Below are positions 1,829 to 64,000 of a stretch of DNA of 64,000 nt, in pieces. Under the pieces are notes generated by a model that saw nothing but the letters and a program-made list of their open reading frames with translations, was not told the origin of the DNA and made no database searches. Every line of letters begins with the position of its first letter. Position 1 is the stretch's first letter. The position numbers and the translations under genes were made by a program. The stretch lies in the IMG/VR virus record IMGVR_UViG_3300035703_000006, positions 62,001 to 126,000 of that record, one strand, 5' to 3'.

Positions 1829-3262
1829 ATGCAAATGTTCAACGCAGAGCATCTGCAGGAGAAGTGGTCACCACTCCTTGATTATCAGGGTCTAGACCCA
1901 ATCAAAGATTCACATCGCAGAATGGTAACTGCAGTTCTCCTGGAGAATCAAGAAAAATTCCTTCGTGAAGAAAGATCATTTCTTTACGAAACTGGTGCTC
2001 CAACAAGCACAACAGGTTCAACATCCAATACTGCTGGTTTCTCCGGTGGTGCCGTAGCAGGTGGTCCAGTAGCAGGTTTCGACCCTGTTCTGATCTCTCT
2101 GATTCGTCGTTCAATGCCTAACCTGGTCGCATATGACCTCGCAGGTGTTCAACCAATGAATGGTCCTACAGGACTCATCTTCGCAATGCGTTCACGTTAT
2201 ACCAACCAGTCTGGTTCTGAAGCATTCTTTGATGAAGTTGATACTCAGTTCTCTGGTAGAAAGGGTAATCAATCTCAGTATGCAGTCAATCCCGTTGTTG
2301 AAGCTAACGTAGGTTTCGGTACTACTGCTGCTCAAACAGGAAACAATCCTGGTCTTCTAAGTGCTGGTGGTGGACAGCAAGATTATAACGTTGGTGGTGG
2401 TATGTCCACTGCTGATGCAGAAATTCTTGGATCTGATTCTGGTGCAGCATTTAACGAAATGGCATTCTCAATCGAGAAAGTCACCGTTACTGCAAAGTCA
2501 AGAGCACTGAAAGCCGAGTATTCACTTGAGCTTGCACAAGACCTTAAGGCAATTCACGGATTGAATGCTGAGGCAGAACTTGCTAACATTCTCTCAACTG
2601 AAATCCTCGCAGAAATCAATAGAGAAGTTATCAGAACTATCTACAAGACTGCAGAAACTGGTGCTCAGCATAACGTTGCTACCGCAGGTACTTTTGACCT
2701 CGACATCGACTCCAATGGTCGTTGGTCGGTTGAGAAGTTCAAGGGTCTGATCTTCCAGATCGAAAGAGATGCAAACGCAATTGCTCAGCGTACTCGTAGA
2801 GGAAAGGGCAACATCATTATGTGCTCATCTGATGTTGCTTCTGCACTTTCAATGGCTGGTCTCCTTGACTACACCCCTGCACTTAATGCAAATCTTAACG
2901 TAGATGATACTGGCAATACATTTGCTGGTGTTCTCAACGGTAAGTATCGTGTATATATTGACCCATATTCAGGTGGTTCAAACCCAAGTGCTTCTGGTGG
3001 TCAGTATTATGTTGTTGGTTATAAGGGTTCTTCCCCTTATGACGCAGGACTCTTCTACTGCCCATACGTTCCTCTCCAAATGGTTCGTGCCGTTGGTGAG
3101 AACACCTTCCAGCCTAAGATCGGATTCAAGACCCGTTATGGTCTTGTTGCTAATCCATTTGCTGAAGGTAAGTCATCTTCTGCACCTGAATCCACTCTGG
3201 GTCGTATTCAAACTAATAGCAACCGCTACTACAGAAGAGTATTGGTTAAGAATCTTATGTGA
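1829..3262 (+). CDS. gp23: Major capsid protein gp23
   Basis: LISLIRRSMPNLVAYDLAGVQPMNGPTGLIFAMRSRY, KSRALKAEYSLELAQDLKAIHGL and FQPKIGFKTRYG are hallmark gp23 motifs. Confidence 0.99.
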   Translation: MQMFNAEHLQEKWSPLLDYQGLDPIKDSHRRMVTAVLLENQEKFLREERSFLYETGAPTSTTGSTSNTAGFSGGAVAGGPVAGFDPVLISLIRRSMPNLVAYDLAGVQPMNGPTGLIFAMRSRYTNQSGSEAFFDEVDTQFSGRKGNQSQYAVNPVVEANVGFGTTAAQTGNNPGLLSAGGGQQDYNVGGGMSTADAEILGSDSGAAFNEMAFSIEKVTVTAKSRALKAEYSLELAQDLKAIHGLNAEAELANILSTEILAEINREVIRTIYKTAETGAQHNVATAGTFDLDIDSNGRWSVEKFKGLIFQIERDANAIAQRTRRGKGNIIMCSSDVASALSMAGLLDYTPALNANLNVDDTGNTFAGVLNGKYRVYIDPYSGGSNPSASGGQYYVVGYKGSSPYDAGLFYCPYVPLQMVRAVGENTFQPKIGFKTRYGLVANPFAEGKSSSAPESTLGRIQTNSNRYYRRVLVKNLM

Positions 3263-3329: not shown

Positions 3330-3872
3330 ATGGCTCAGAGTCCTTGGTCAAAACAAATTGATAATAGAAATTTTTTATCCCCTGTAGGATTTAAATTTAC
3401 CTTATCCGAATATCCTAAAGTTGATTTTTTTTCTAATTCATCACAAATTCCAGGAATAAACTTAGGAGTTTCAATTCAATCAAATTATTTAAAAGATATT
3501 CCAATTCCTGGAGATAAAATTTCCTATGATGATTTTTCTTTTGAATTTTATGTAGATGAAAATTTACAAAATTATTTACAAATACATAACTGGATAAGAG
3601 GACTCGGATACCCAAATAGTGTTTCAGAATTTCAAAATTTATTAAATTCTGATGAATTTAATCCAGGAGTTCAAGATGCTAATTTCGGACAATCTGATGG
3701 AAGTTTAATCATCTATAATAGCAATTATAATCCCATAGGACAAGTAAATTTTAGAGGATTATTTCCAGTTTCCTTATCTACTTTAGATTTTACTGCAAAG
3801 GCACAAGATATAAATTTTTTGACTGCAAATGTAACATTCAAATATACTTTATACGATATAATCGTTTATTAA
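3330..3872 (+). CDS. gp3: Tail tube terminator / tail completion protein (gp3, gp19-like fold)
   Basis: NRNFLSPVGFKF, F.VDENLQNYLQIHNWIRGLG and TANVTFKYTLY motifs; usual position after gp23 in cyanomyoviruses. Confidence 0.85.
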   Translation: MAQSPWSKQIDNRNFLSPVGFKFTLSEYPKVDFFSNSSQIPGINLGVSIQSNYLKDIPIPGDKISYDDFSFEFYVDENLQNYLQIHNWIRGLGYPNSVSEFQNLLNSDEFNPGVQDANFGQSDGSLIIYNSNYNPIGQVNFRGLFPVSLSTLDFTAKAQDINFLTANVTFKYTLYDIIVY

Positions 3873-6216: not shown

Positions 6217-6276
6217 GTTCTCATTGATGTGGTAAAATTGTAGTTATTATCGGTAGTCTTACTCTCTCCTTTACAA

Positions 6277-6747
6277 ATGAATAAAATCAAAAAGAATCCG
6301 CATTACGTAAACAATAAAGACTTTTATGATGCTTTATTGGTTTATAAGAATAAAGTTAAAGCAGCAAAAGAACAAGATTTGCCAGCTCCACCAATAACAA
6401 ATTATCTTGGAGATTGCTTTCTTAAAATAGCAACTCATTTATCTTATCGTCCCAATTTTGTAAATTACATTTTTCGGGAGGATATGATTAGTGATGGAGT
6501 TGAAAATTGTGTTCAATATATTAATAATTTTGATGTAAATAGATCAAATCCATTTGCATATTTTACACAAATTGTATATTATGCTTTCTTGCGTCGTATT
6601 CAAAAAGAGAAAAAGCAGATGGAAATCAAAGAGAAAATTATTGAAAGAAGTGGATATGAGCAGTTATTTTATGTGGATGATGACTCTCCAAATTCTTCTG
6701 ACTATAATACAATCAAAGAAAACATTCAAATGAAATCATATCAATGA
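6277..6747 (+). CDS. gp55: Late transcription sigma factor gp55
   Basis: HYVNNKDF, YLGDCFLKIATHLSYRPNFVNY, DMISDGVENC and NPFAYFTQI motifs. Confidence 0.97.
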   Translation: MNKIKKNPHYVNNKDFYDALLVYKNKVKAAKEQDLPAPPITNYLGDCFLKIATHLSYRPNFVNYIFREDMISDGVENCVQYINNFDVNRSNPFAYFTQIVYYAFLRRIQKEKKQMEIKEKIIERSGYEQLFYVDDDSPNSSDYNTIKENIQMKSYQ

Positions 6748-7784
6748 AAATCGGACTTATAACTGACACTCATTATAATTTTCGTAAAGCTAATAAAGCA
6801 TTTCACGAATATTTTGAAAAATTTTATAATGATATATTTTTTCCAACTTTAAAGAAAAATAAAATTAAAGTAGTTGTTCACCTTGGTGATGCCTTTGATA
6901 ATCGCAAGGGAGTTGATTACTGGGCATTGCAGTGGGCAAAGAAAAATGTATATGATAAGTTTGAAGAACTTGGAATTAAAGTTTATAGTATTGTTGGAAA
7001 TCACGATGCGTACTATAAAAATACGAATGAAGTAAATTCAATTGATGTTTTATTGAATGAGTATTCAAATATCGTAAAAATATCAGAACCAATTCAAACT
7101 CAAATTGGTGATACTGAATGTGTTTTCTTGCCTTGGATTTGTTCTGACAATGAGAAAGAAGTATTCTCTTTGCTGGAAAAGACAAGTGCAAAGGTTCTAT
7201 TTGGTCACTTGGAATTATCTGGGTTTTCTGTTTATCCAGGACACGTACAGGAAAATGGATTAAGTAAAAATATATTTCAAAAATTTGATAGAGTTTTTTC
7301 TGGTCACTATCATACTTCTAGTAATGATGGAAAAATCTTTTACTTAGGAAATCCATATCAAATGTTTTGGTCGGATGTAAATGATAAAAGAGGATTTCAT
7401 ATTTTAGATACTGATGATTATTCTTTACAAAGAATTGAAAATCCTTATACAATGTTTGAAAAAGTTTACTATAATGATGAATGCGAAGATATTGATTTTT
7501 CCTTATTAAAAAACAAAATGGTTAAACTTTTTGTTGAAAAAAAAGAAAATCATCTAAAGTTTGACAAATTTGTAAGTCAAATTATGAATGCAAATCCTAT
7601 AGAGTTTAAGATTGTTGAAAATTTTGATGTTTATGACGAAAATGTAAATAATGAACAATTTTCGGCAGAAGATACACTTAGCATTTTGGATAAATATGTT
7701 GAAGAAGCTGAATTTAGTTTGGATAAAACAATTATTAAAAATCTTCTAAGAGATGTTTATAAAGAAGCATTAGAAATAGAATAA
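6744..7784 (+). CDS. gp47: Recombination endonuclease subunit gp47 (Mre11/SbcD-like)
   Basis: Metallophosphoesterase motifs DTH, GDAFD, GNHD, GH and SGHYH. Confidence 0.95.
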   Translation: MKIGLITDTHYNFRKANKAFHEYFEKFYNDIFFPTLKKNKIKVVVHLGDAFDNRKGVDYWALQWAKKNVYDKFEELGIKVYSIVGNHDAYYKNTNEVNSIDVLLNEYSNIVKISEPIQTQIGDTECVFLPWICSDNEKEVFSLLEKTSAKVLFGHLELSGFSVYPGHVQENGLSKNIFQKFDRVFSGHYHTSSNDGKIFYLGNPYQMFWSDVNDKRGFHILDTDDYSLQRIENPYTMFEKVYYNDECEDIDFSLLKNKMVKLFVEKKENHLKFDKFVSQIMNANPIEFKIVENFDVYDENVNNEQFSAEDTLSILDKYVEEAEFSLDKTIIKNLLRDVYKEALEIE

Positions 7785-8071
7785 TGTATATACTATCAAT
7801 TAAAGAACAAGAAGATGAAGGTGCTTATGCAGTATTGAATGAAGACGGAGATAAGACTTTGTATATTTTTGAGGAAGAAGATGACGCTTATAGATACGCT
7901 GGACTTTTGGAAGCAGAAGATTATCCAGAAATGTCTGTAGTTGAAGTAGAAGATGAAGTAGCAATAAAAACCTGTGAAGTGTATGGATATAGTTATGCTA
8001 TAATTACCCCTAATGACTTTGTAATACCCCCACGAGATTATGATTCTGTTCAAAAAAATTTCATATCGTAA
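7784..8071 (+). CDS. DUF3110-like hypothetical protein
   Basis: FEEEDDAYRYAGLLEAEDYP resembles the cyanobacterial DUF3110 family; lies between gp47 and gp46. Confidence 0.6.
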   Translation: MYILSIKEQEDEGAYAVLNEDGDKTLYIFEEEDDAYRYAGLLEAEDYPEMSVVEVEDEVAIKTCEVYGYSYAIITPNDFVIPPRDYDSVQKNFIS

Positions 8072-9755
8072 TTTTTTATCATCTGGAAATCAACCAACAC
8101 AAATTAATTTGGTTGACAATCAAACAACATTGATTGTTGGTTCTAATGGTTCAGGAAAAAGTACCTTGCTGGATGCTTTATGTTTTGTTCTGTTCAACAA
8201 AGCATTCCGAAAAATTACAAAACCTCAACTTATAAATTCAACTAATTCTAAAGATTGTTTGGTTGAAATTGAATTTAGTATTGGTACTAAAGAATATAAA
8301 GTAGTAAGAGGAATCAAACCAAATATTTTTGAAATTTGGATTGATGGTGTATTACAAAATCAATCTTCTGCTACTACTGACCAACAAAAACAATTAGAGG
8401 AAAGTATTCTTAAATTGAATTATAAATCTTTTACTCAGATTGTGATTCTTGGTAGTGCCTCTTTTGTTCCTTTTATGCAACTCTCTGCTGCAACAAGAAG
8501 GGAAATTGTAGAAGATTTGTTGGATATAAAAATATTTTCTTCTATGAATTCTGTAATTAAAGATAAGATACGTAAATTCAATGAAGAAATAAAAGATTCA
8601 TCTTTTCTTGAAAAATCAACAGAAGAAAAGATTGAAATGCAAAAAAGTTTTATTGAAGAACTTGAGAATCGTGGTAATGCCAATATCAATACCAATAAAG
8701 AAAAGATTGCCAAGTTAGATGCCGAAGTTGCTGATTGCATGACACATATCTCTATAGTTGAGGCATGTCTTTTCAATAAAACTAAATTACAAGAAGAAGT
8801 TATTGGTGCAGGGGATAAGTTGCTGAAACTTAATAATTTAAAAGGCAAAATCTCTCAAAAAGTATCTACAATTACTAAAGAGCATAAGTTTTTTACTGAA
8901 AATTCGGTCTGCCCTACCTGCACTCAGACTATTGAAGAAGAGTTTCGGTTAAATAGAATTACGGACGCTCAAAATAAAGCAAAGGAACTCCAAAAAGGTT
9001 ATCAAGATCTTGAGGAGACTATAAAAGTAGAACAAGAGAGAGAGCGTCAATTCGTTGCTCTATCTACGGAGATTGCAAAACTTACAAATGAGATTTCTCA
9101 AAACAATACTCGGATTTCATTCAACCAAAAACAAATTAGAGATCTTGGAAATGAAATTCAAACTATTACCGAACAATTTAAAAACAGAAATTCTGAAAGA
9201 GATGAATTAAAAAAGTTAGAACAAAAACTTACAGAAATAGTAACAAATAAATCTAAACAAAAAGAAAATATTTCAAATTATGAATTTCTCCATTTGCTAA
9301 TGAAAGATGGAGGGATAAAGGCAAAAATTATACAAAATTATTTGCCTACAATGAATCAACTCATTAATAAGTATTTGCAGTTGATGGATTTTTACATTAA
9401 CTTTACTTTTGATGAAGAATTTAAAGAACTTATAAAATCTCCAATCTATGAAGATTTTAGTTACGAGTCTTTTAGTGAAGGAGAAAAAATGAGAATCAAT
9501 CTCTCAATTTTATTTACCTGGAGGGAAATTGCGAGACTTAAGAATTCTGTAAATACAAATCTCCTTATTTTGGATGAGGTTTTTGATAGTTCTTTGGATT
9601 TTGCTGGAACTGATTATTTTACACGTATCATTAAATTTATTATTAGTAATACTAATGTATTTGTTATATCACATAAGACAGATGAATTAATTGATAAATT
9701 TGATAAAGTAATTAAATTTGAAAAAGTAAAAGGATTTAGTAAAATGATTGACTGA
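8040..9755 (+). CDS. gp46: Recombination ATPase gp46 (Rad50/SbcC-like)
   Basis: GSNGSGKST Walker A, CPTC zinc hook, FSEGEK signature and LILDEVFD Walker B. Confidence 0.97.
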   Translation: MILFKKISYRNFLSSGNQPTQINLVDNQTTLIVGSNGSGKSTLLDALCFVLFNKAFRKITKPQLINSTNSKDCLVEIEFSIGTKEYKVVRGIKPNIFEIWIDGVLQNQSSATTDQQKQLEESILKLNYKSFTQIVILGSASFVPFMQLSAATRREIVEDLLDIKIFSSMNSVIKDKIRKFNEEIKDSSFLEKSTEEKIEMQKSFIEELENRGNANINTNKEKIAKLDAEVADCMTHISIVEACLFNKTKLQEEVIGAGDKLLKLNNLKGKISQKVSTITKEHKFFTENSVCPTCTQTIEEEFRLNRITDAQNKAKELQKGYQDLEETIKVEQERERQFVALSTEIAKLTNEISQNNTRISFNQKQIRDLGNEIQTITEQFKNRNSERDELKKLEQKLTEIVTNKSKQKENISNYEFLHLLMKDGGIKAKIIQNYLPTMNQLINKYLQLMDFYINFTFDEEFKELIKSPIYEDFSYESFSEGEKMRINLSILFTWREIARLKNSVNTNLLILDEVFDSSLDFAGTDYFTRIIKFIISNTNVFVISHKTDELIDKFDKVIKFEKVKGFSKMID

Positions 9756-61885: not shown

Positions 61886-61959
61886 GGTAAACAAATGTTA
61901 CGAAATCAAAACAATTCTTAACATTGTTAAACACCCGATTAACCGAGACCTATGGGTGT

Positions 61960-62050
61960 ATAAATTACGTCTCTCATGCCCACACTGGAGGGTGGTGTGG
62001 GAAATAACGTACTATCCAGTTCCCCCTGGACTTTTACTTACCCTTTAACG
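61960..62050 (+). ncRNA. Structured psbA leader, PhotoRC-II-like
   Basis: ACGTCTCTCAT, then CCCACAC/GTGTGGG and TCCAG/CTGGA hairpins directly 5' of psbA; family identity from recollection only. Confidence 0.5.
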
Positions 62051-62053
62051 AAA

Positions 62054-63064
62054 ATGACTGCTTCTATTGCACAACGCAATTCTACTACTAATCTCTGGGA
62101 ATCTTTTTGCCAGTGGGTTACTTCAACCGATAACCGCCTTTATGTGGGTTGGTTCGGTGTTCTTATGATTCCAACGTTGCTTGCTGCAACGACTTGCTTC
62201 ATCATCGCATTCATCGGTGCTCCCCCTGTGGACATTGATGGAATTCGTGAACCCGTTGCTGGTTCACTCATGTACGGAAACAACATCATCTCTGGTGCTG
62301 TGATTCCTTCGTCCAACGCAATTGGACTGCACTTTTACCCCATCTGGGAAGCTGCTTCTCTAGATGAATGGCTTTACAATGGTGGACCTTTCCAACTGGT
62401 AGTGTTCCACTTCCTCATTGGTATTTACTGCTATATGGGTCGTGAGTGGGAACTTTCATATCGTCTAGGTATGCGTCCTTGGATCATGGTTGCTTACTCT
62501 GCACCTGTTGCTGCTGCAAGCGCAGTGTTCCTGGTCTATCCTTTTGGTCAAGGTTCTTTCTCTGATGCAATGCCTCTAGGTATCTCTGGCACCTTTAACT
62601 ACATGCTTGTGTTCCAGGCAGAGCACAACATCCTGATGCACCCCTTCCATATGCTTGGAGTTGCTGGTGTGTTTGGTGGTTCTCTGTTCTCTGCTATGCA
62701 TGGATCTCTTGTTACCTCCTCACTGGTTCGTGAAACCACTGAGAATGAGTCACAGAACTATGGTTACAAGTTCGGTCAAGAAGAAGAGACTTACAATATT
62801 GTTGCTGCTCATGGTTATTTCGGACGCCTTATTTTCCAATACGCTTCCTTCAATAACTCCCGTTCGCTGCACTTCTTCCTCGCTGCCTGGCCTGTTGTCG
62901 GTATCTGGTTTACTGCTCTTGGTGTAAGCACTATGGCTTTTAACCTTAATGGATTTAATTTCAACCAGTCTATCGTTGATGGTCAGGGTAAGGTTATTAA
63001 CACTTGGGCTGACGTTCTGAACCGTGCAGGTCTGGGCATGGAAGTGATGCACGAGCGCAACGCT
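62054..63064 (+). CDS. psbA: Photosystem II D1 protein, exon 1 (337 codons)
   Basis: [15 protein letters not shown]...MHERNA; true start at 62054 (MTASIAQR). Confidence 0.98.
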
Positions 63065-63322
63065 AGATTTGTTGGTGTTGTTGCCTAGTAATAGGCATTA
63101 GAAAAATCGGGTTAAACGGGGAAACTCTCAAGTAGACAATCCCGTACCAAGTCAGAAAGGGTTTAAGTTTTCTGAAAGGTCTAACGACTAGGTAGTGAGT
63201 CCCAACAATAATCTACCCACGAATGCCCGACTCCTTAATAAACATAAGGATGAAGAGATAGTCTGAACTTACTGGCGACAGTAAGAAGTAAAGAATAAAG
63301 AGTCTTTACGATAACACAATTG
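63065..63322 (+). ncRNA. Group I intron (258 nt, IA-like, ORF-less) in psbA
   Basis: Exon ends in U and intron ends in G. P1: CAACGCU pairs with GGUGUUG. P3 TCGGG/CCCGA; P4 ACGGGGA/TCCCGT; P7 GACTA/TAGTC; extra P7.1 GGTAG/CTACC; P9 TTACTG-GCGA-CAGTAA. Removal restores HERNA|HNFPLDL. Confidence 0.95.
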
Positions 63323-63394
63323 CACAATTTCCCTCTTGACCTCGCAGCAGCAGAAGCAACACCAGTTGCTCTTACTGCTCCAACCATCGGTTGA
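63323..63394 (+). CDS. psbA: Photosystem II D1 protein, exon 2 (HNFPLDLAAAEATPVALTAPTIG)
   Basis: Canonical D1 C-terminus, in frame after intron removal; spliced product is 360 aa. Confidence 0.97.
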   Translation, partial: HNFPLDLAAAEATPVALTAPTIG

Positions 63395-63419: not shown

Positions 63420-63447
63420 AGAGAGACCTTTACGGGTCTCTTTTTTT
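63420..63447 (+). terminator. Terminator after psbA
   Basis: AGAGACC/GGTCTCT stem followed by a T run. Confidence 0.85.
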
Positions 63448-63458
63448 GTGGTATAATA

Positions 63459-63466
63459 TATAAATA
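63459..63466 (+). promoter_or_regulatory. Late promoter TATAAATA
   Basis: Exact match 27 nt before ATG 63493. Confidence 0.75.
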
Positions 63467-63492
63467 GTTATGGAAAGTTATGAGCAACCTTT

Positions 63493-64000
63493 ATGGATTT
63501 GCACCAACTAGTAATATCTGAATGTGATAGAAGAGGATTGGAACTAATTCATCTTCCTGAAAAACTTGTTCGTCGTTCTACTGATGTGATTGTAAGTTGC
63601 CCTTGCACAGGTCAACGAAATATGAGCATAAGAAACTTTATTGTGACCTATGAAAAAGGTGGTGAAGCATTCTGTTGTAAAAGAAAAGCAAAAATTGGAA
63701 AGAATAATCCAGCATTTGGGAAACCAACTTGGAATGCAGGAACTGTTGGTGTATCAAAGAGTTATGGATTTTTCGGTTTTAAAGAAGAATGGTCTGATAG
63801 AGAAGATTACTTGTATTTTATTGAAACCATTTATGGAACATACAAGATAGGAAGGTCTTTTCATGGAATAAAATATCGTTTTACTGAAACTATAAAAGAA
63901 CTTGGTGAATGGAAAGCAACTCATAAAGAAGTGTTTGATTGTGAGAGATACATTTTGGATGCATATAAGCAGTATCAAAAGAAGATTAGTGGTATAATTG
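63493..64000 (+). CDS. Free-standing GIY-YIG/T5orf172-like putative homing endonuclease (3' truncated; not in track)
   Basis: Frame is open to the window end: Cys-rich N-terminus (CPC...CC), NUMOD3-like GKNNPAFGK, then YLYFIETIYGTYKIGRS...R...E. Confidence 0.65.
   Translation, partial: MDLHQLVISECDRRGLELIHLPEKLVRRSTDVIVSCPCTGQRNMSIRNFIVTYEKGGEAFCCKRKAKIGKNNPAFGKPTWNAGTVGVSKSYGFFGFKEEWSDREDYLYFIETIYGTYKIGRSFHGIKYRFTETIKELGEWKATHKEVFDCERYILDAYKQYQKKISGII

What the first reader, a model, noticed from the sequence alone, without database searches (positions are those of the whole stretch)
63459..64000. Unlisted free-standing GIY-YIG-like endonuclease beside the intron-split psbA: a possible new collaborative-homing pair
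An ORF missing from the track begins at 63493 under a late promoter. It has a Cys-rich N-terminus, a NUMOD3-like GKNNPAFGK motif and a YLY-x9-YKIGRS nuclease-like motif placed C-terminally. In S-PM2 the free-standing F-CphI (endonuclease VII-like) cuts intronless psbA and the intron protects its own allele. Here the same slot holds an enzyme from an apparently different nuclease family, suggesting independent evolution of the intron-endonuclease partnership (inference).
Basis: partly seen in the sequence, partly recalled or inferred. Interest (0 to 1): 0.72.

Follow-up and report, generated by a model that had tools for sequence, protein, structure and literature searches.

The report
Homing-nuclease gene beside psbA intron
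A real 201-codon gene just downstream of a freshwater cyanophage's intron-split photosystem gene psbA encodes a T5orf172 (GIY-YIG-superfamily) homing-endonuclease-like protein that almost always travels with that intron. It is probably a second, independently recruited "intron plus free-standing nuclease" partnership like F-CphI of phage S-PM2, but no cutting has been shown.

Summary
An ORF starts at 63493, 26 nt after a TATAAATA late-promoter box (63459-63466). It runs past the window to a 201-aa product.

The protein has three parts: a Cys-rich CapR-like zinc-finger module, a NUMOD3-like GKNNPAFGK motif, and a C-terminal T5orf172 (GIY-YIG superfamily) domain that keeps the family's invariant residues. 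Codon-position diversity of 0.08/0.03/0.30 shows purifying selection.

The gene follows psbA, which is split after ...HERNA by a 258-nt ORF-less group I intron, 6 nt downstream of the S-PM2 site.

- All 42 contigs with close homologues carry this intron.
- Six more lineages (31-42% identical) also sit directly after an intron-split psbA.
- Two relatives are encoded inside another psbA intron.
- Only two family members lie beside a psbA without the intron, and both have altered junction bases.

The same intron (88-100% identical) also neighbours F-CphI-like EndoVII, classical GIY-YIG and HNH genes. One of those GIY-YIG genes carries ORF201's DNA-binding module.

Cleavage, target site and intron protection are untested. 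It is a new member of a known kind, and moderately interesting.

The parts
61919..62015 (+). PhotoRC-II RNA motif in the psbA leader (context)
   Evidence: Rfam RF01717, 84.6 bits against a cut-off of 39
62054..63064 (+). psbA exon 1 (D1 residues 1-337, ends ...MHERNA; last six bases AACGCT)
   Evidence: ORF list. It is 92% identical to S-PM2 D1. AACGCT is invariant in 18 of 18 intron-bearing alleles. In the Rfam alignment it pairs with intron GGTGTT in P1.
63065..63322 (+). ORF-less group I intron, 258 nt, inserted between D1 codons A337 and H338
   Evidence: Rfam Intron_gpI 61.5 bits. Removing it restores ...HERNA|HNFPLDL.... Diversity is pi 0.038 against 0.171 in exon 1. A metatranscriptome contig joins 63064 to 63323, and two RNA-library contigs end exactly at 63322 (weak, because relatives without the intron could give the joint).
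63323..63394 (+). psbA exon 2 (HNFPLDLAAAEATPVALTAPTIG, stop at 63392-63394)
   Evidence: Translation
63420..63447 (+). Intrinsic-terminator-like hairpin with T-run after psbA
   Evidence: A similar hairpin with T-run stands at the same place in relative L002 and in S-PM2.
63459..63466 (+). T4-type late-promoter box TATAAATA, 26 nt before the ORF's ATG
   Evidence: Sequence. Present 23-26 nt upstream of the ATG in 39 of 39 relatives. Calling it a late promoter rests on established knowledge of T4-like phages and was not tested.
63493..64000 (+). ORF201, first 169 codons. The gene continues 98 nt beyond the window to G000:C1:126098 (201 aa, P0001).
   Evidence: Conserved and under purifying selection. 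It is the only copy of this domain family in the 247-kb genome.
63493..63678 (+). N-terminal Cys-rich module (aa 1-62), CapR-like zinc-finger DNA-binding domain
   Evidence: Pfam CapR E 0.005, 17.4 bits, below the 24.2-bit cut-off. Family member P0036 has CapR at E 5e-35. Model pLDDT is 81-88. The module recurs at the C-terminus of a classical GIY-YIG ORF in the same slot (L067: 35% identity, E 1e-12).
63697..63723 (+). NUMOD3-like motif GKNNPAFGK (aa 69-77)
   Evidence: Sequence. It falls in the consensus NNPxxGKxxWNxG of the family alignment. The family member on L063 passes the NUMOD3 cut-off (27 bits against 20.4). ORF201 itself does not.
63799..64000 (+). T5orf172 / GIY-YIG-superfamily nuclease-like domain (aa ~103-192, runs past the window). 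Motifs: LY(F) aa 107-109, KIG aa 118-120, R129, E151, then E173 and F175 outside the window.
   Evidence: Invariant columns of alignment A3. Pfam hits of homologues. hhalign to a phage T5 ORF. Domain model pLDDT 87.8 with AFDB matches to T5orf172/GIY-YIG clusters.

Best explanation
ORF201 is a free-standing homing-endonuclease gene. Its product joins a sequence-reading module (a CapR-like zinc finger plus a NUMOD3-like linker) to a C-terminal T5orf172 nuclease domain of the GIY-YIG superfamily.

Proposed mechanism (inferred):
1. The gene is transcribed late from its own TATAAATA box.
2. During mixed infection the enzyme cuts psbA alleles of co-infecting cyanophages that lack the intron, at or near the ...AACGCT|CAC... 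insertion site.
3. Repair from the ORF201 genome copies in the ORF-less intron and, with it, exon 2 and ORF201.
4. The phage's own allele escapes because the 258-nt intron splits the site. This is 'collaborative homing', as shown for F-CphI in S-PM2.

Shown here: the gene is real and selected; it belongs to the T5orf172 family by homology and predicted fold; it is tightly and repeatedly linked to intron-split psbA.

Inferred only: nuclease activity, the target, protection by the intron, and joint mobility.
For: **Gene and family**
- The ORF is 201 aa, with codon-position diversity 0.080/0.027/0.298.
- 37 of 39 relatives are intact (192-209 aa) and all keep the promoter box.
- Nine of 24 family members hit Pfam T5orf172. 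P0026 (23.1 bits against 20) and P0028 (MUG113, 22.8 against 22.3) pass the cut-offs.
- hhalign of the domain alignment to a phage T5 T5orf172 ORF gives E 4e-5 over 84 columns and aligns LY / K-G-S / R / E / G-TE-F.
- L107, Y108, K118, G120, R129, E151, E173 and F175 are invariant.
- T5orf172 is a GIY-YIG subfamily. One member's nuclease activity depends on a conserved Glu, and CapR-type zinc fingers are the usual DNA-binding domains of T5orf172 homing genes (PMC10448857).

**Linkage to the intron**
- 39 of 39 IMG/VR contigs and 3 of 3 ENA contigs with close homologues carry the same intron directly upstream.
- Six further lineages sit right after psbA exon 2 behind a group I intron or an intron-sized gap: P0011, P0012, P0014, P0017, L092/L097 and the P0015 group, 31-42% identical.
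- Among contigs carrying the intron's 23-mer, 41 of 54 informative ones have a family member in the slot. In a sample of intron-less alleles it is 1 of 66 (Fisher p 2e-19, not corrected for relatedness).
- The two intron-less alleles with a family member (L113, L204) read GCC|CAT and GCA|CAT instead of GCT|CAC.
- None of 7 intron-less alleles next to T5orf172 or EndoVII genes has GCT|CAC, against 40 of 72 without such a gene (p 0.005, post hoc).

**Turnover typical of homing genes**
- The same intron (88-100% identical) lies beside EndoVII/F-CphI-like, GIY-YIG/NUMOD3 and HNH_3 genes.
- A remnant of ORF201 lies in L066.
- ORF201's DNA-binding module is fused to a classical GIY-YIG domain in L067.
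- Relatives P0026 and P0028 are encoded inside a psbA intron.

**Precedent**
- F-CphI cuts intron-less psbA, and the intron protects the S-PM2 allele (PMC6083498).
Against: - There is no biochemical or genetic evidence for cutting or for a target.
- ORF201 itself does not reach any Pfam nuclease model. Its only hits are CapR at E 0.005 and a spurious NIR_SIR.
- The intron is far less diverged (pi 0.038) than ORF201's third codon positions (0.298) or exon 2 and the spacer (0.145-0.155). Intron and gene therefore have not simply spread together recently as one block. Either the ribozyme is strongly constrained, or the intron moves or is homogenised on its own.
- The contigs are related phages, so co-occurrence counts overstate the number of independent events.
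- Free-standing homing genes in T4-like phages often target a neighbouring conserved gene without any intron. Two family members do lie beside an intron-less psbA.
Confidence: 0.6

Rival explanations
1. ORF201 is an ordinary free-standing homing endonuclease whose target is not the intron insertion site. The target could be elsewhere in the psbA 3' end, in the psbA-psbD spacer or in psbD. The intron is then a closely linked passenger that is co-converted, or simply co-inherited, and gives no protection.
For: - The psbA-psbD gap is a general hot-spot for such genes. EndoVII, HNH and one T5orf172 gene also occur beside intron-less psbA in 8 of 66 sampled loci.
- This genome has a second, HNH-like ORF in the same gap.
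- Intron diversity is uncoupled from that of ORF201.
- Characterised GIY-YIG homing enzymes often cut some distance from where they bind (established knowledge of I-TevI and the Seg enzymes).
Against: - The link to the intron holds across at least seven lineages that share only 31-42% identity, while the downstream neighbours differ.
- Intron-less alleles next to such genes avoid the GCT|CAC junction.
- Relatives live inside psbA introns.
- The homologous slot enzyme F-CphI does target the insertion site (PMC6083498).
Confidence: 0.22
2. ORF201 is a domesticated homing-endonuclease relative that no longer promotes its own spread. It might act as a site-specific DNA-binding regulator of psbA or psbD expression, as CapR does and as I-TevI does when it acts as a repressor. 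Or it might be a weapon that degrades competitors' DNA, as Odn does.
For: - CapR, a repressor, and Odn, an anti-satellite nuclease, both derive from T5orf172 homing genes (PMC10448857, PMC8096241).
- Strong purifying selection and near-universal intactness (37 of 39) are unusual for a purely selfish gene in decline.
- The gene sits between a terminator and the next photosystem gene and has its own promoter.
Against: - The residues that align with the catalytic Arg and Glu of GIY-YIG enzymes are invariant across the family. A pure DNA binder would not need to keep them.
- The slot shows replacement by unrelated nuclease genes and a decayed remnant. That is the life-cycle of homing genes, not of a fixed regulator.
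- The gene is absent from every cultured phage searched and from most psbA loci.
Confidence: 0.12
3. The ORF is not a functional gene. It would be a chance open frame, or a decaying remnant, in AT-rich intergenic DNA.
For: - GC content is 33%, which favours long chance frames on some strands.
- ORF201 gets no above-threshold Pfam or PHROG hit of its own.
Against: - Third-position diversity is ten-fold higher than second-position diversity.
- Homologues at 84-96% identity stand in 39 contigs with a conserved ATG and promoter box.
- Distant homologues were found at E down to 2e-23 in a 1.8-billion-protein library.
- The domain model is confident, with pLDDT 87.8.
Confidence: 0.01

Closest known systems
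F-CphI of Synechococcus phage S-PM2, with the psbA group I intron ('collaborative homing'; Zeng, Bonocora & Shub 2009; PMC6083498)
   Same: - A free-standing gene lies immediately downstream of an intron-split psbA and upstream of psbD.
- It follows a terminator and a TATAAATA box.
- The intron has no ORF of its own.
- The protein has an N-terminal Cys-rich region and a C-terminal nuclease domain.
   Different: - The nuclease family differs: Endonuclease_7 (DHHRN) in F-CphI against T5orf172/GIY-YIG here.
- No sequence similarity between the two was detected: homologue searches with ORF201 returned no S-PM2 or EndoVII-type protein.
- The intron is a different one: 212 nt at HER|NAHNF in S-PM2, 258 nt at HERNA|HNF here, 6 nt apart.
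- F-CphI's cleavage and the intron's protective effect were shown at the bench. Nothing has been shown for ORF201.
T5orf172 homing-endonuclease genes of vibriophage ICP1 and other phages, including the one beside the ICP1 terminase intron (Barth et al. 2023, PMC10448857)
   Same: - Same architecture: zinc-finger DNA-binding module(s) of CapR type followed by a C-terminal T5orf172 domain.
- Location next to a conserved, important gene.
- One ICP1 member sits beside, not inside, an ORF-less intron.
- Both show domain shuffling between homing genes.
   Different: - The host lineage differs: T4-like freshwater cyanophage against ICP1.
- The target gene differs: psbA, an auxiliary photosynthesis gene.
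- ORF201 has only one weak CapR-like unit plus a NUMOD3-like motif.
- No cultured-phage homologue is detectable by tblastn.
- The family seen here appears specialised on psbA.
Classical GIY-YIG homing endonucleases of T4 (I-TevI, SegA-G)
   Same: - Same superfamily core: a Tyr-containing first motif, then x-I-G, Arg and Glu.
- Modular 'beads on a string' build with NUMOD3-type linkers.
- Both free-standing and intron-encoded members exist in T4-like phages.
   Different: - Domain order is reversed. The nuclease domain is N-terminal in I-TevI and the Seg enzymes, and C-terminal here.
- ORF201 does not hit Pfam GIY-YIG (PF01541).
- It has the T5orf172 signature G-(S/T)-E-x-F after the catalytic Glu.
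CapR of the Vibrio cholerae PLE satellites (Netter et al. 2021, PMC8096241)
   Same: The N-terminal module of ORF201 gives a weak match to the CapR homology domain. Family member P0036 carries three clear copies.
   Different: CapR is a repressor without a nuclease domain. ORF201 keeps a complete nuclease-like domain.

Membership tests
T5orf172 / GIY-YIG superfamily (Pfam PF10544, PF13455; clan GIY-YIG) | Significant match to the family profile | tested here: inconclusive
   ORF201 itself gives no hit. Its homologues do: 9 of 24 at E down to 3.6e-5, and P0026 and P0028 are above the curated cut-offs. These link to ORF201 at phmmer E 1.9e-7 and 5.9e-7 in a 1.8-billion-protein search. hhalign of the family alignment to one T5 T5orf172 ORF gives E 4.3e-5 at 69% probability; to the other it gives only 7% probability. 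Membership therefore rests on transitive homology.
T5orf172 / GIY-YIG superfamily | Core motifs: hydrophobic-Tyr first motif, x-I/V-G second motif, conserved Arg, catalytic Glu, distal (S/T)-E-x-F | tested here: met
   L107, Y108, K118, G120, R129, E151, E173 and F175 are invariant in 20 sequences that share 26-39% identity. They align with the corresponding motifs of the phage T5 ORF.
T5orf172 / GIY-YIG superfamily | GIY-YIG alpha/beta fold | tested here: inconclusive
T5orf172 / GIY-YIG superfamily | Metal-dependent DNA cleavage that depends on the conserved Glu | not testable with these tools
   This needs purified protein and E151 and R129 mutants.
CapR-type zinc-finger DNA-binding domain (PF21817) | Profile match and four zinc ligands | tested here: inconclusive
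   E 0.005 and 17.4 bits against a cut-off of 24.2, over aa 8-52. Cys36, Cys38, Cys60 and Cys61 are available as ligands; C36 and the CC pair are conserved in the family while C38 is not (relatives have a His nearby). Relative P0036 has three CapR domains (E 5e-35). Metal binding was not tested.
NUMOD3 motif (PF07460) | Profile match | tested here: inconclusive
   ORF201 gives no hit. Four family members hit at E 0.004-0.03, and the L063 member passes at 27 bits against 20.4. The motif NNPxxGKxxWNxG is conserved.
Collaborative homing (free-standing endonuclease plus ORF-less intron) | An endonuclease gene adjacent to, not inside, an intron that has no ORF of its own | tested here: met
   The intron at 63065-63322 has no ORF. 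ORF201 starts 98 nt after the psbA stop codon.
Collaborative homing | Intron and endonuclease gene are inherited together across genomes | tested here: met
   42 of 42 close homologues, and nearly all distant ones, carry the intron. The counts are 41 of 54 for intron-bearing loci against 1 of 66 for intron-less loci. Caveats: the contigs are related to one another, and the intron is much less diverged than the gene.
Collaborative homing | The enzyme cuts the intron-less allele at or near the insertion site | not testable with these tools
   Only indirect hints exist. Intron-less alleles next to T5orf172 or EndoVII genes lack the GCT|CAC junction (0 of 7 against 40 of 72; post hoc).
Collaborative homing | The intron interrupts the recognition site and protects the carrier | not testable with these tools
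   This needs cleavage assays on intron-bearing and intron-less substrates.
Group I intron (Rfam RF00028) | Covariance-model match above the gathering score, U at the 5' splice site, G at the 3' end, and an exon reading frame restored on removal | tested here: met
   61.5 bits against 50. Exon 1 ends in T and the intron ends in G. Removal restores ...HERNA|HNFPLDL.... Splicing itself is not shown: the RNA joint could come from intron-less relatives.

The most novel reading that the evidence does not exclude
One ORF-less intron at a single psbA site may act as a shared shield and vehicle for a rotating set of unrelated free-standing nucleases: T5orf172, EndoVII/F-CphI-like, classical GIY-YIG and HNH. 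These genes replace one another in the adjacent slot and exchange a locus-specific DNA-binding module. The T5orf172 lineage also has members that have moved inside psbA introns. If so, uncultivated freshwater cyanophages hold a natural series of intermediates for how free-standing endonucleases and introns join up to form mobile introns, the pathway proposed by Bonocora and Shub.
Probability: 0.35. Interest if true: 0.72.

Novelty: new member of a known kind. Interest (0 to 1): 0.52.

Why it matters
Collaborative homing is known from very few cases: F-CphI with psbA in S-PM2, T3/T7-like phages, and a suggested case in ICP1. How such partnerships arise is an open question.

This locus gives a second nuclease family at essentially the same psbA position, 6 nt from the S-PM2 site. 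The population data add three things:
- The same intron stands beside at least four nuclease families.
- The DNA-binding module has been shuffled between two nuclease types.
- There are both free-standing and intron-encoded relatives on psbA.

Together these make two competing ideas testable on one gene: independent recruitment, and turnover of homing genes around a stable intron.

The finding also gives a function to an ORF family of uncultivated freshwater cyanophages for which the searched collections give no informative name and Pfam and PHROGs no significant match. It also flags psbA, a widely used cyanophage marker and auxiliary metabolic gene, as a recombination hot-spot whose 3' end may not follow the genome's phylogeny.

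Tried and rejected
- **Direct family searches with ORF201.** Pfam and PHROG gave only sub-threshold or spurious hits: CapR at E 0.005, NIR_SIR, and unnamed PHROGs.
- **Cultured phages.** tblastn of ORF201, P0015 and P0017 against 50,697 phage records found nothing.
- **PDB sequence profiles.** Profile HMMs of the whole-protein and domain alignments against PDB sequences found nothing.
- **Foldseek against PDB.** Nothing reliable for the full model or the domain model.
- **Locus search with the whole-family alignment.** The search for related loci failed because no conserved stretch was available. P0013 gave no viral-contig relatives.
- **The intron against phage records.** Only generic group I cores of unrelated phages matched, and no cyanophage isolate was listed.
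- **Intron ORFs in relatives.** I asked whether those in L004 and L110 are T5orf172 proteins. hhalign says no.
- **Metatranscriptomes.** One contig joins 63064 to 63323, and two contigs end at the intron's last base. The match was loose (88% likeness, side 23), so intron-less relatives could explain the joint. I do not count this as proof of splicing or of ORF201 expression.
- **Second exon 2 copies.** I searched for a duplicated psbA exon 2 after T5orf172 genes as a footprint of insertion. Only L058 has one, and there it flanks an EndoVII-type gene.
- **Chance ORF.** Considered and rejected on codon-position diversity and conservation.
- **The other candidate partner.** I considered the downstream HNH-like ORF as the intron's true partner. 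It is absent from most contigs, where psbD follows ORF201 directly.
Full report
**Where the window lies**

The window is bases 62001-126000 of a 247,112-bp virus record that CheckV rates as complete. Its nearest cultured relatives are the Synechococcus phages DSL-LC03 and DSL-LC02 and the freshwater phage S-SRM01 (PMC8557907), at about 80% identity over 3-13% of a 22-kb query. Runs that hold this stretch are labelled mostly freshwater, lake and estuary metagenomes; the two best holders, one of them the likely source sample, are labelled subsurface. It is therefore an uncultivated T4-like cyanophage, most likely from fresh or brackish water.

**The observation**

- psbA starts at 62054, behind a PhotoRC-II leader motif.
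- Exon 1 ends at 63064 (...CAC GAG CGC AAC GCT).
- A 258-nt group I intron occupies 63065-63322 (Rfam 61.5 bits against a 50-bit cut-off).
- Exon 2 is 63323-63394. Removing the intron restores ...HERNA|HNFPLDL....
- A terminator-like hairpin follows at 63420-63443, then its T-run.
- TATAAATA lies at 63459-63466.
- Twenty-six nt later, at 63493, an ATG opens a frame that leaves the window.
- In the genome the frame closes after 201 codons (L001:1594-2199, protein P0001).
The only slip is the spacer between YLY and YKIGRS, which is 8 residues, not 9.

**It is a real gene**

Sixteen alleles were aligned. Nucleotide diversity in ORF201 by codon position:

| Codon position | Diversity |
|---|---|
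| 1 | 0.080 |
| 2 | 0.027 |
| 3 | 0.298 |

- All 39 IMG/VR relatives (84-96% identical) start with ATG and keep TATAAATA 23-26 nt upstream. Thirty-seven are intact at 192-209 aa, and two stop at 165 aa.
- Homology with the window ends 30-40 nt before the ORF201 stop codon, and the DNA beyond is unalignable (pi about 0.38). In many contigs psbD follows directly; here two more ORFs intervene.

**What the protein is**

ORF201 alone gives only a sub-threshold CapR match (E 0.005, aa 8-52). A HMMER pass over 1.8 billion representative proteins found 32 clusters.

The aligned relatives (A1 and A3) share:
- the motif NNPxxGKxxWNxG;
- a C-terminal domain with invariant L107, Y108, K118, G120, R129, E151, E173 and F175.

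Evidence that places the C-terminal domain in the T5orf172 family:
- Nine of 24 members hit Pfam T5orf172, three hit MUG113, four hit NUMOD3 and three hit CapR (best E 5e-35). P0026 and P0028 pass the curated cut-offs.
- hhalign of A3 against one of phage T5's two T5orf172 ORFs gives E 4.3e-5 over 84 columns, with the hallmark motifs in register. The other T5 ORF aligns only weakly.
- The AlphaFold model of the domain is confident (pLDDT 87.8, pTM 0.80).
- It matches AlphaFold-DB clusters named 'T5orf172 domain', 'Bacteriophage T5 Orf172 DNA-binding domain-containing protein' and 'GIY-YIG nuclease family protein', with TM 0.55-0.75.
- The full-length model matches two-domain proteins of the same names, and zinc-ribbon proteins, over residues 1-190.

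According to Barth et al. (PMC10448857):
- T5orf172 is a GIY-YIG subfamily.
- One member's nuclease activity depends on a conserved Glu.
- CapR-type zinc fingers are the commonest DNA-binding domains of T5orf172 homing genes.

ORF201 is therefore a small member of that class. It has one CapR-like unit, a NUMOD3-like linker and a C-terminal nuclease-like domain with its conserved residues intact. It is the only copy of this domain family in the genome.

**Comparison with S-PM2**

In S-PM2 the gene order is psbA (two exons), F-CphI, a hypothetical gene, psbD. F-CphI is an Endonuclease_7 protein. It cuts intron-less psbA, and the intron protects its own allele (PMC6083498).

Here the order is psbA, ORF201, a 235-aa ORF, a 256-aa HNH-like ORF, psbD.

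The introns differ. The S-PM2 intron is 212 nt and sits at HER|NAHNF. The window's intron is 258 nt and sits 6 nt further on, at HERNA|HNF. The two align only in core elements.

**Linkage to the intron**

- Every close homologue has the same intron (91-100% identical) immediately upstream: 39 of 39 IMG/VR contigs and 3 of 3 ENA contigs.
- More distant lineages also start about 50-120 nt after psbA exon 2 behind a group I intron or an intron-sized gap. These are P0011, P0012, P0014, P0017, the L092/L097 ORFs and the P0015 group, 31-42% identical to ORF201.
- P0026 and P0028 are encoded inside a different psbA intron, between D1 residues 251 and 252.
- Only two family members lie beside a psbA without the intron: L113 and L204.

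Two samples of IMG/VR contigs were compared:

| Sample | Informative loci | T5orf172-family gene in the slot | Any nuclease-like gene in the slot |
|---|---|---|---|
| Contigs holding a 23-mer of the intron (55 found) | 54 | 41 | 53 |
| Intron-less junctions | 66 | 1 | 8 |

Fisher p is 2e-19 for the family and 3e-24 for any nuclease-like gene. These p-values ignore shared ancestry and serve only to show the size of the contrast.

**One intron, several nucleases**

Among the intron-bearing contigs without a T5orf172-family gene, the slot holds:
- a 173-aa or 138-aa Endonuclease_7 protein, 40-42% identical to F-CphI, in nine contigs;
- classical GIY-YIG/NUMOD3 genes in L104 and L067;
- an HNH_3/NUMOD4 gene in L066, next to a remnant of ORF201's C-terminus;
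- no recognisable nuclease gene in L081.

Three further intron-bearing contigs without a close ORF201 homologue (L063, L092, L097) carry distant T5orf172 genes; they are counted among the 41 in the table above.

Intron identity to the window stays high across these partners:

| Contig | Gene in the slot | Intron identity to the window |
|---|---|---|
| L099 | EndoVII-type | 98.4% |
| L104 | GIY-YIG/NUMOD3 | 98.4% |
| L067 | GIY-YIG | 100% over the 189 nt present |

The flanking exons of the same contigs are only 68-90% identical.

The 254-aa GIY-YIG ORF of L067 carries, at its C-terminus, a module 35% identical (E 1e-12) to ORF201's residues 10-83. The same DNA-binding module is thus joined to two different nuclease domains at the same locus. 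That is what one expects if the module reads a site at this locus (inference).

**Hints about the target**

- In intron-bearing alleles the last six exon bases, AACGCT, are invariant. They pair with intron GGTGTT in P1.
- Among intron-less alleles with no neighbouring nuclease gene, 40 of 72 read GCT|CAC at the junction.
- None of the seven intron-less alleles next to T5orf172 or EndoVII genes does (p 0.005).
- That comparison was chosen after looking at the data, and the loci are not independent, so it is a lead and not a result.

**What does not fit neatly**

Diversity among the aligned alleles:

| Segment | Diversity (pi) |
|---|---|
| psbA exon 1, all sites | 0.171 |
| psbA, third codon positions | about 0.39 |
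| Intron | 0.038 |
| Exon 2 | 0.145 |
| Spacer | 0.155 |
| ORF201, third codon positions | 0.298 |

The intron is a sharply bounded island of low diversity, so intron and gene have not simply swept together as one recent block. Two explanations remain open. Almost every intron position may be constrained. Or the intron may be homogenised or moved more often than its neighbour, for example because every nuclease in the slot mobilises it. I could not tell these apart.

**Mechanism and verdict**

The best-supported reading is a free-standing T5orf172 homing endonuclease acting with the psbA intron in collaborative homing (confidence 0.6).

Rivals:
- a homing enzyme whose target is elsewhere, with the intron as a linked passenger (0.22);
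- a domesticated binder or weapon (0.12).

Cleavage, cut site and protection are all inferred.

The literature I could search describes F-CphI, intron-encoded psbA endonucleases in S-SRM01 and S-CBWM1 (PMC8557907), and T5orf172 genes in ICP1. It describes no T5orf172 gene beside cyanophage psbA. No cultured phage has a detectable homologue.

I file it as a new member of a known kind. The population-level pattern, one intron with many nucleases, is the part most worth following up.

Noticed in passing
G000:C1:127016-127786 (L010:1617-2387), 1.0 kb beyond the window end: There is a second homing-endonuclease-like gene in the psbA-psbD gap. It is a 256-aa ORF whose first 161 aa match phrog_953 'HNH endonuclease' (E 3e-27). 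It has no Pfam hit. It is absent from most related contigs, where psbD follows ORF201 directly.
   Followed up: partly
G000:C1:126113-126820 (L010:714-1421): A 235-aa Lys/Glu-rich ORF carries an internal repeat (..EQVDIYDIILSHFLDE.. and ..EEVDIYDIILSHLLDE..). Shorter ORFs of 156 aa with a similar N-terminus follow the EndoVII-type genes in L073 and L074. Its function is unknown.
   Followed up: no
window 61919-62015: A PhotoRC-II RNA motif (Rfam RF01717, 84.6 bits) lies in the psbA leader. The same motif precedes psbA in related contigs L004, L060, L092, L097, L099, L104 and L110.
   Followed up: no
L092 (Rfam hits 6276-8841), L060 (7115-8523), L110 (1112-2816), L004 (1704-3191): The psbA genes of related uncultivated cyanophages carry three to five group I introns each. 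Some introns contain ORFs of about 225 aa that are not T5orf172 proteins by hhalign. psbA is an intron hot-spot in this group.
   Followed up: partly
L058 (reverse-complemented coordinates 2392-2463 and 3079-3150): An EndoVII-type gene is flanked by two copies of psbA exon 2. The second, diverged copy (YNFPLDLAAAETTMVALTAPAIG) begins exactly at the intron-insertion codon. This looks like a footprint of a cassette (intron, exon 2, nuclease gene) joined to a recipient gene that was broken at that site. It is the only such case among 117 loci.
   Followed up: partly
L066:458-529, then ORFs at 544-1062 and 1088-1846: A remnant of ORF201's C-terminus (aa 167-190, 83% identical) lies directly after psbA exon 2. 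An HNH_3/NUMOD4 ORF and an ORF with a GIY-YIG-like N-terminal motif (no Pfam nuclease hit) follow it. This is evidence of gene replacement in the slot.
   Followed up: partly
L067:3554-4315 (minus strand): A classical N-terminal GIY-YIG ORF in the same slot carries ORF201's CapR-like/NUMOD3 module at its C-terminus (35% identity, E 1e-12). The domains have been shuffled between two nuclease types.
   Followed up: yes
L037:~3725-3850 and L041:~3650-3850: Two contigs from one sample series have internal deletions of 141 nt and 63 nt in the intron. The 141-nt deletion removes the 3' splice site. Their sister contigs L036, L039 and L040 are intact. These are either degenerate introns or assembly artefacts.
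   Followed up: partly
L112:496-990 (P0026); L114:3001-3717, L115 and L116 (P0028): T5orf172 relatives are encoded inside a psbA intron between D1 residues 251 and 252. The 39.6-kb L114 contig also encodes a group II intron reverse transcriptase/maturase. Whether it comes from a phage, a cyanobacterium or a plastid is unknown.
   Followed up: partly
window 63429-63457: A sigma-70-like promoter match (TTTACG, 17-nt spacer, TATAAT, with TG extension; 10 of 12) overlaps the psbA terminator just before the late box. The TATAAT lies in a 12-nt insertion absent from L002 and S-PM2. The number of such matches in the region is no more than chance.
   Followed up: no
P0021 (1950 aa): A very large protein matches only ORF201's residues 29-67, part of the zinc-finger module (E 2e-11). 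The module therefore also occurs in unrelated large proteins.
   Followed up: no
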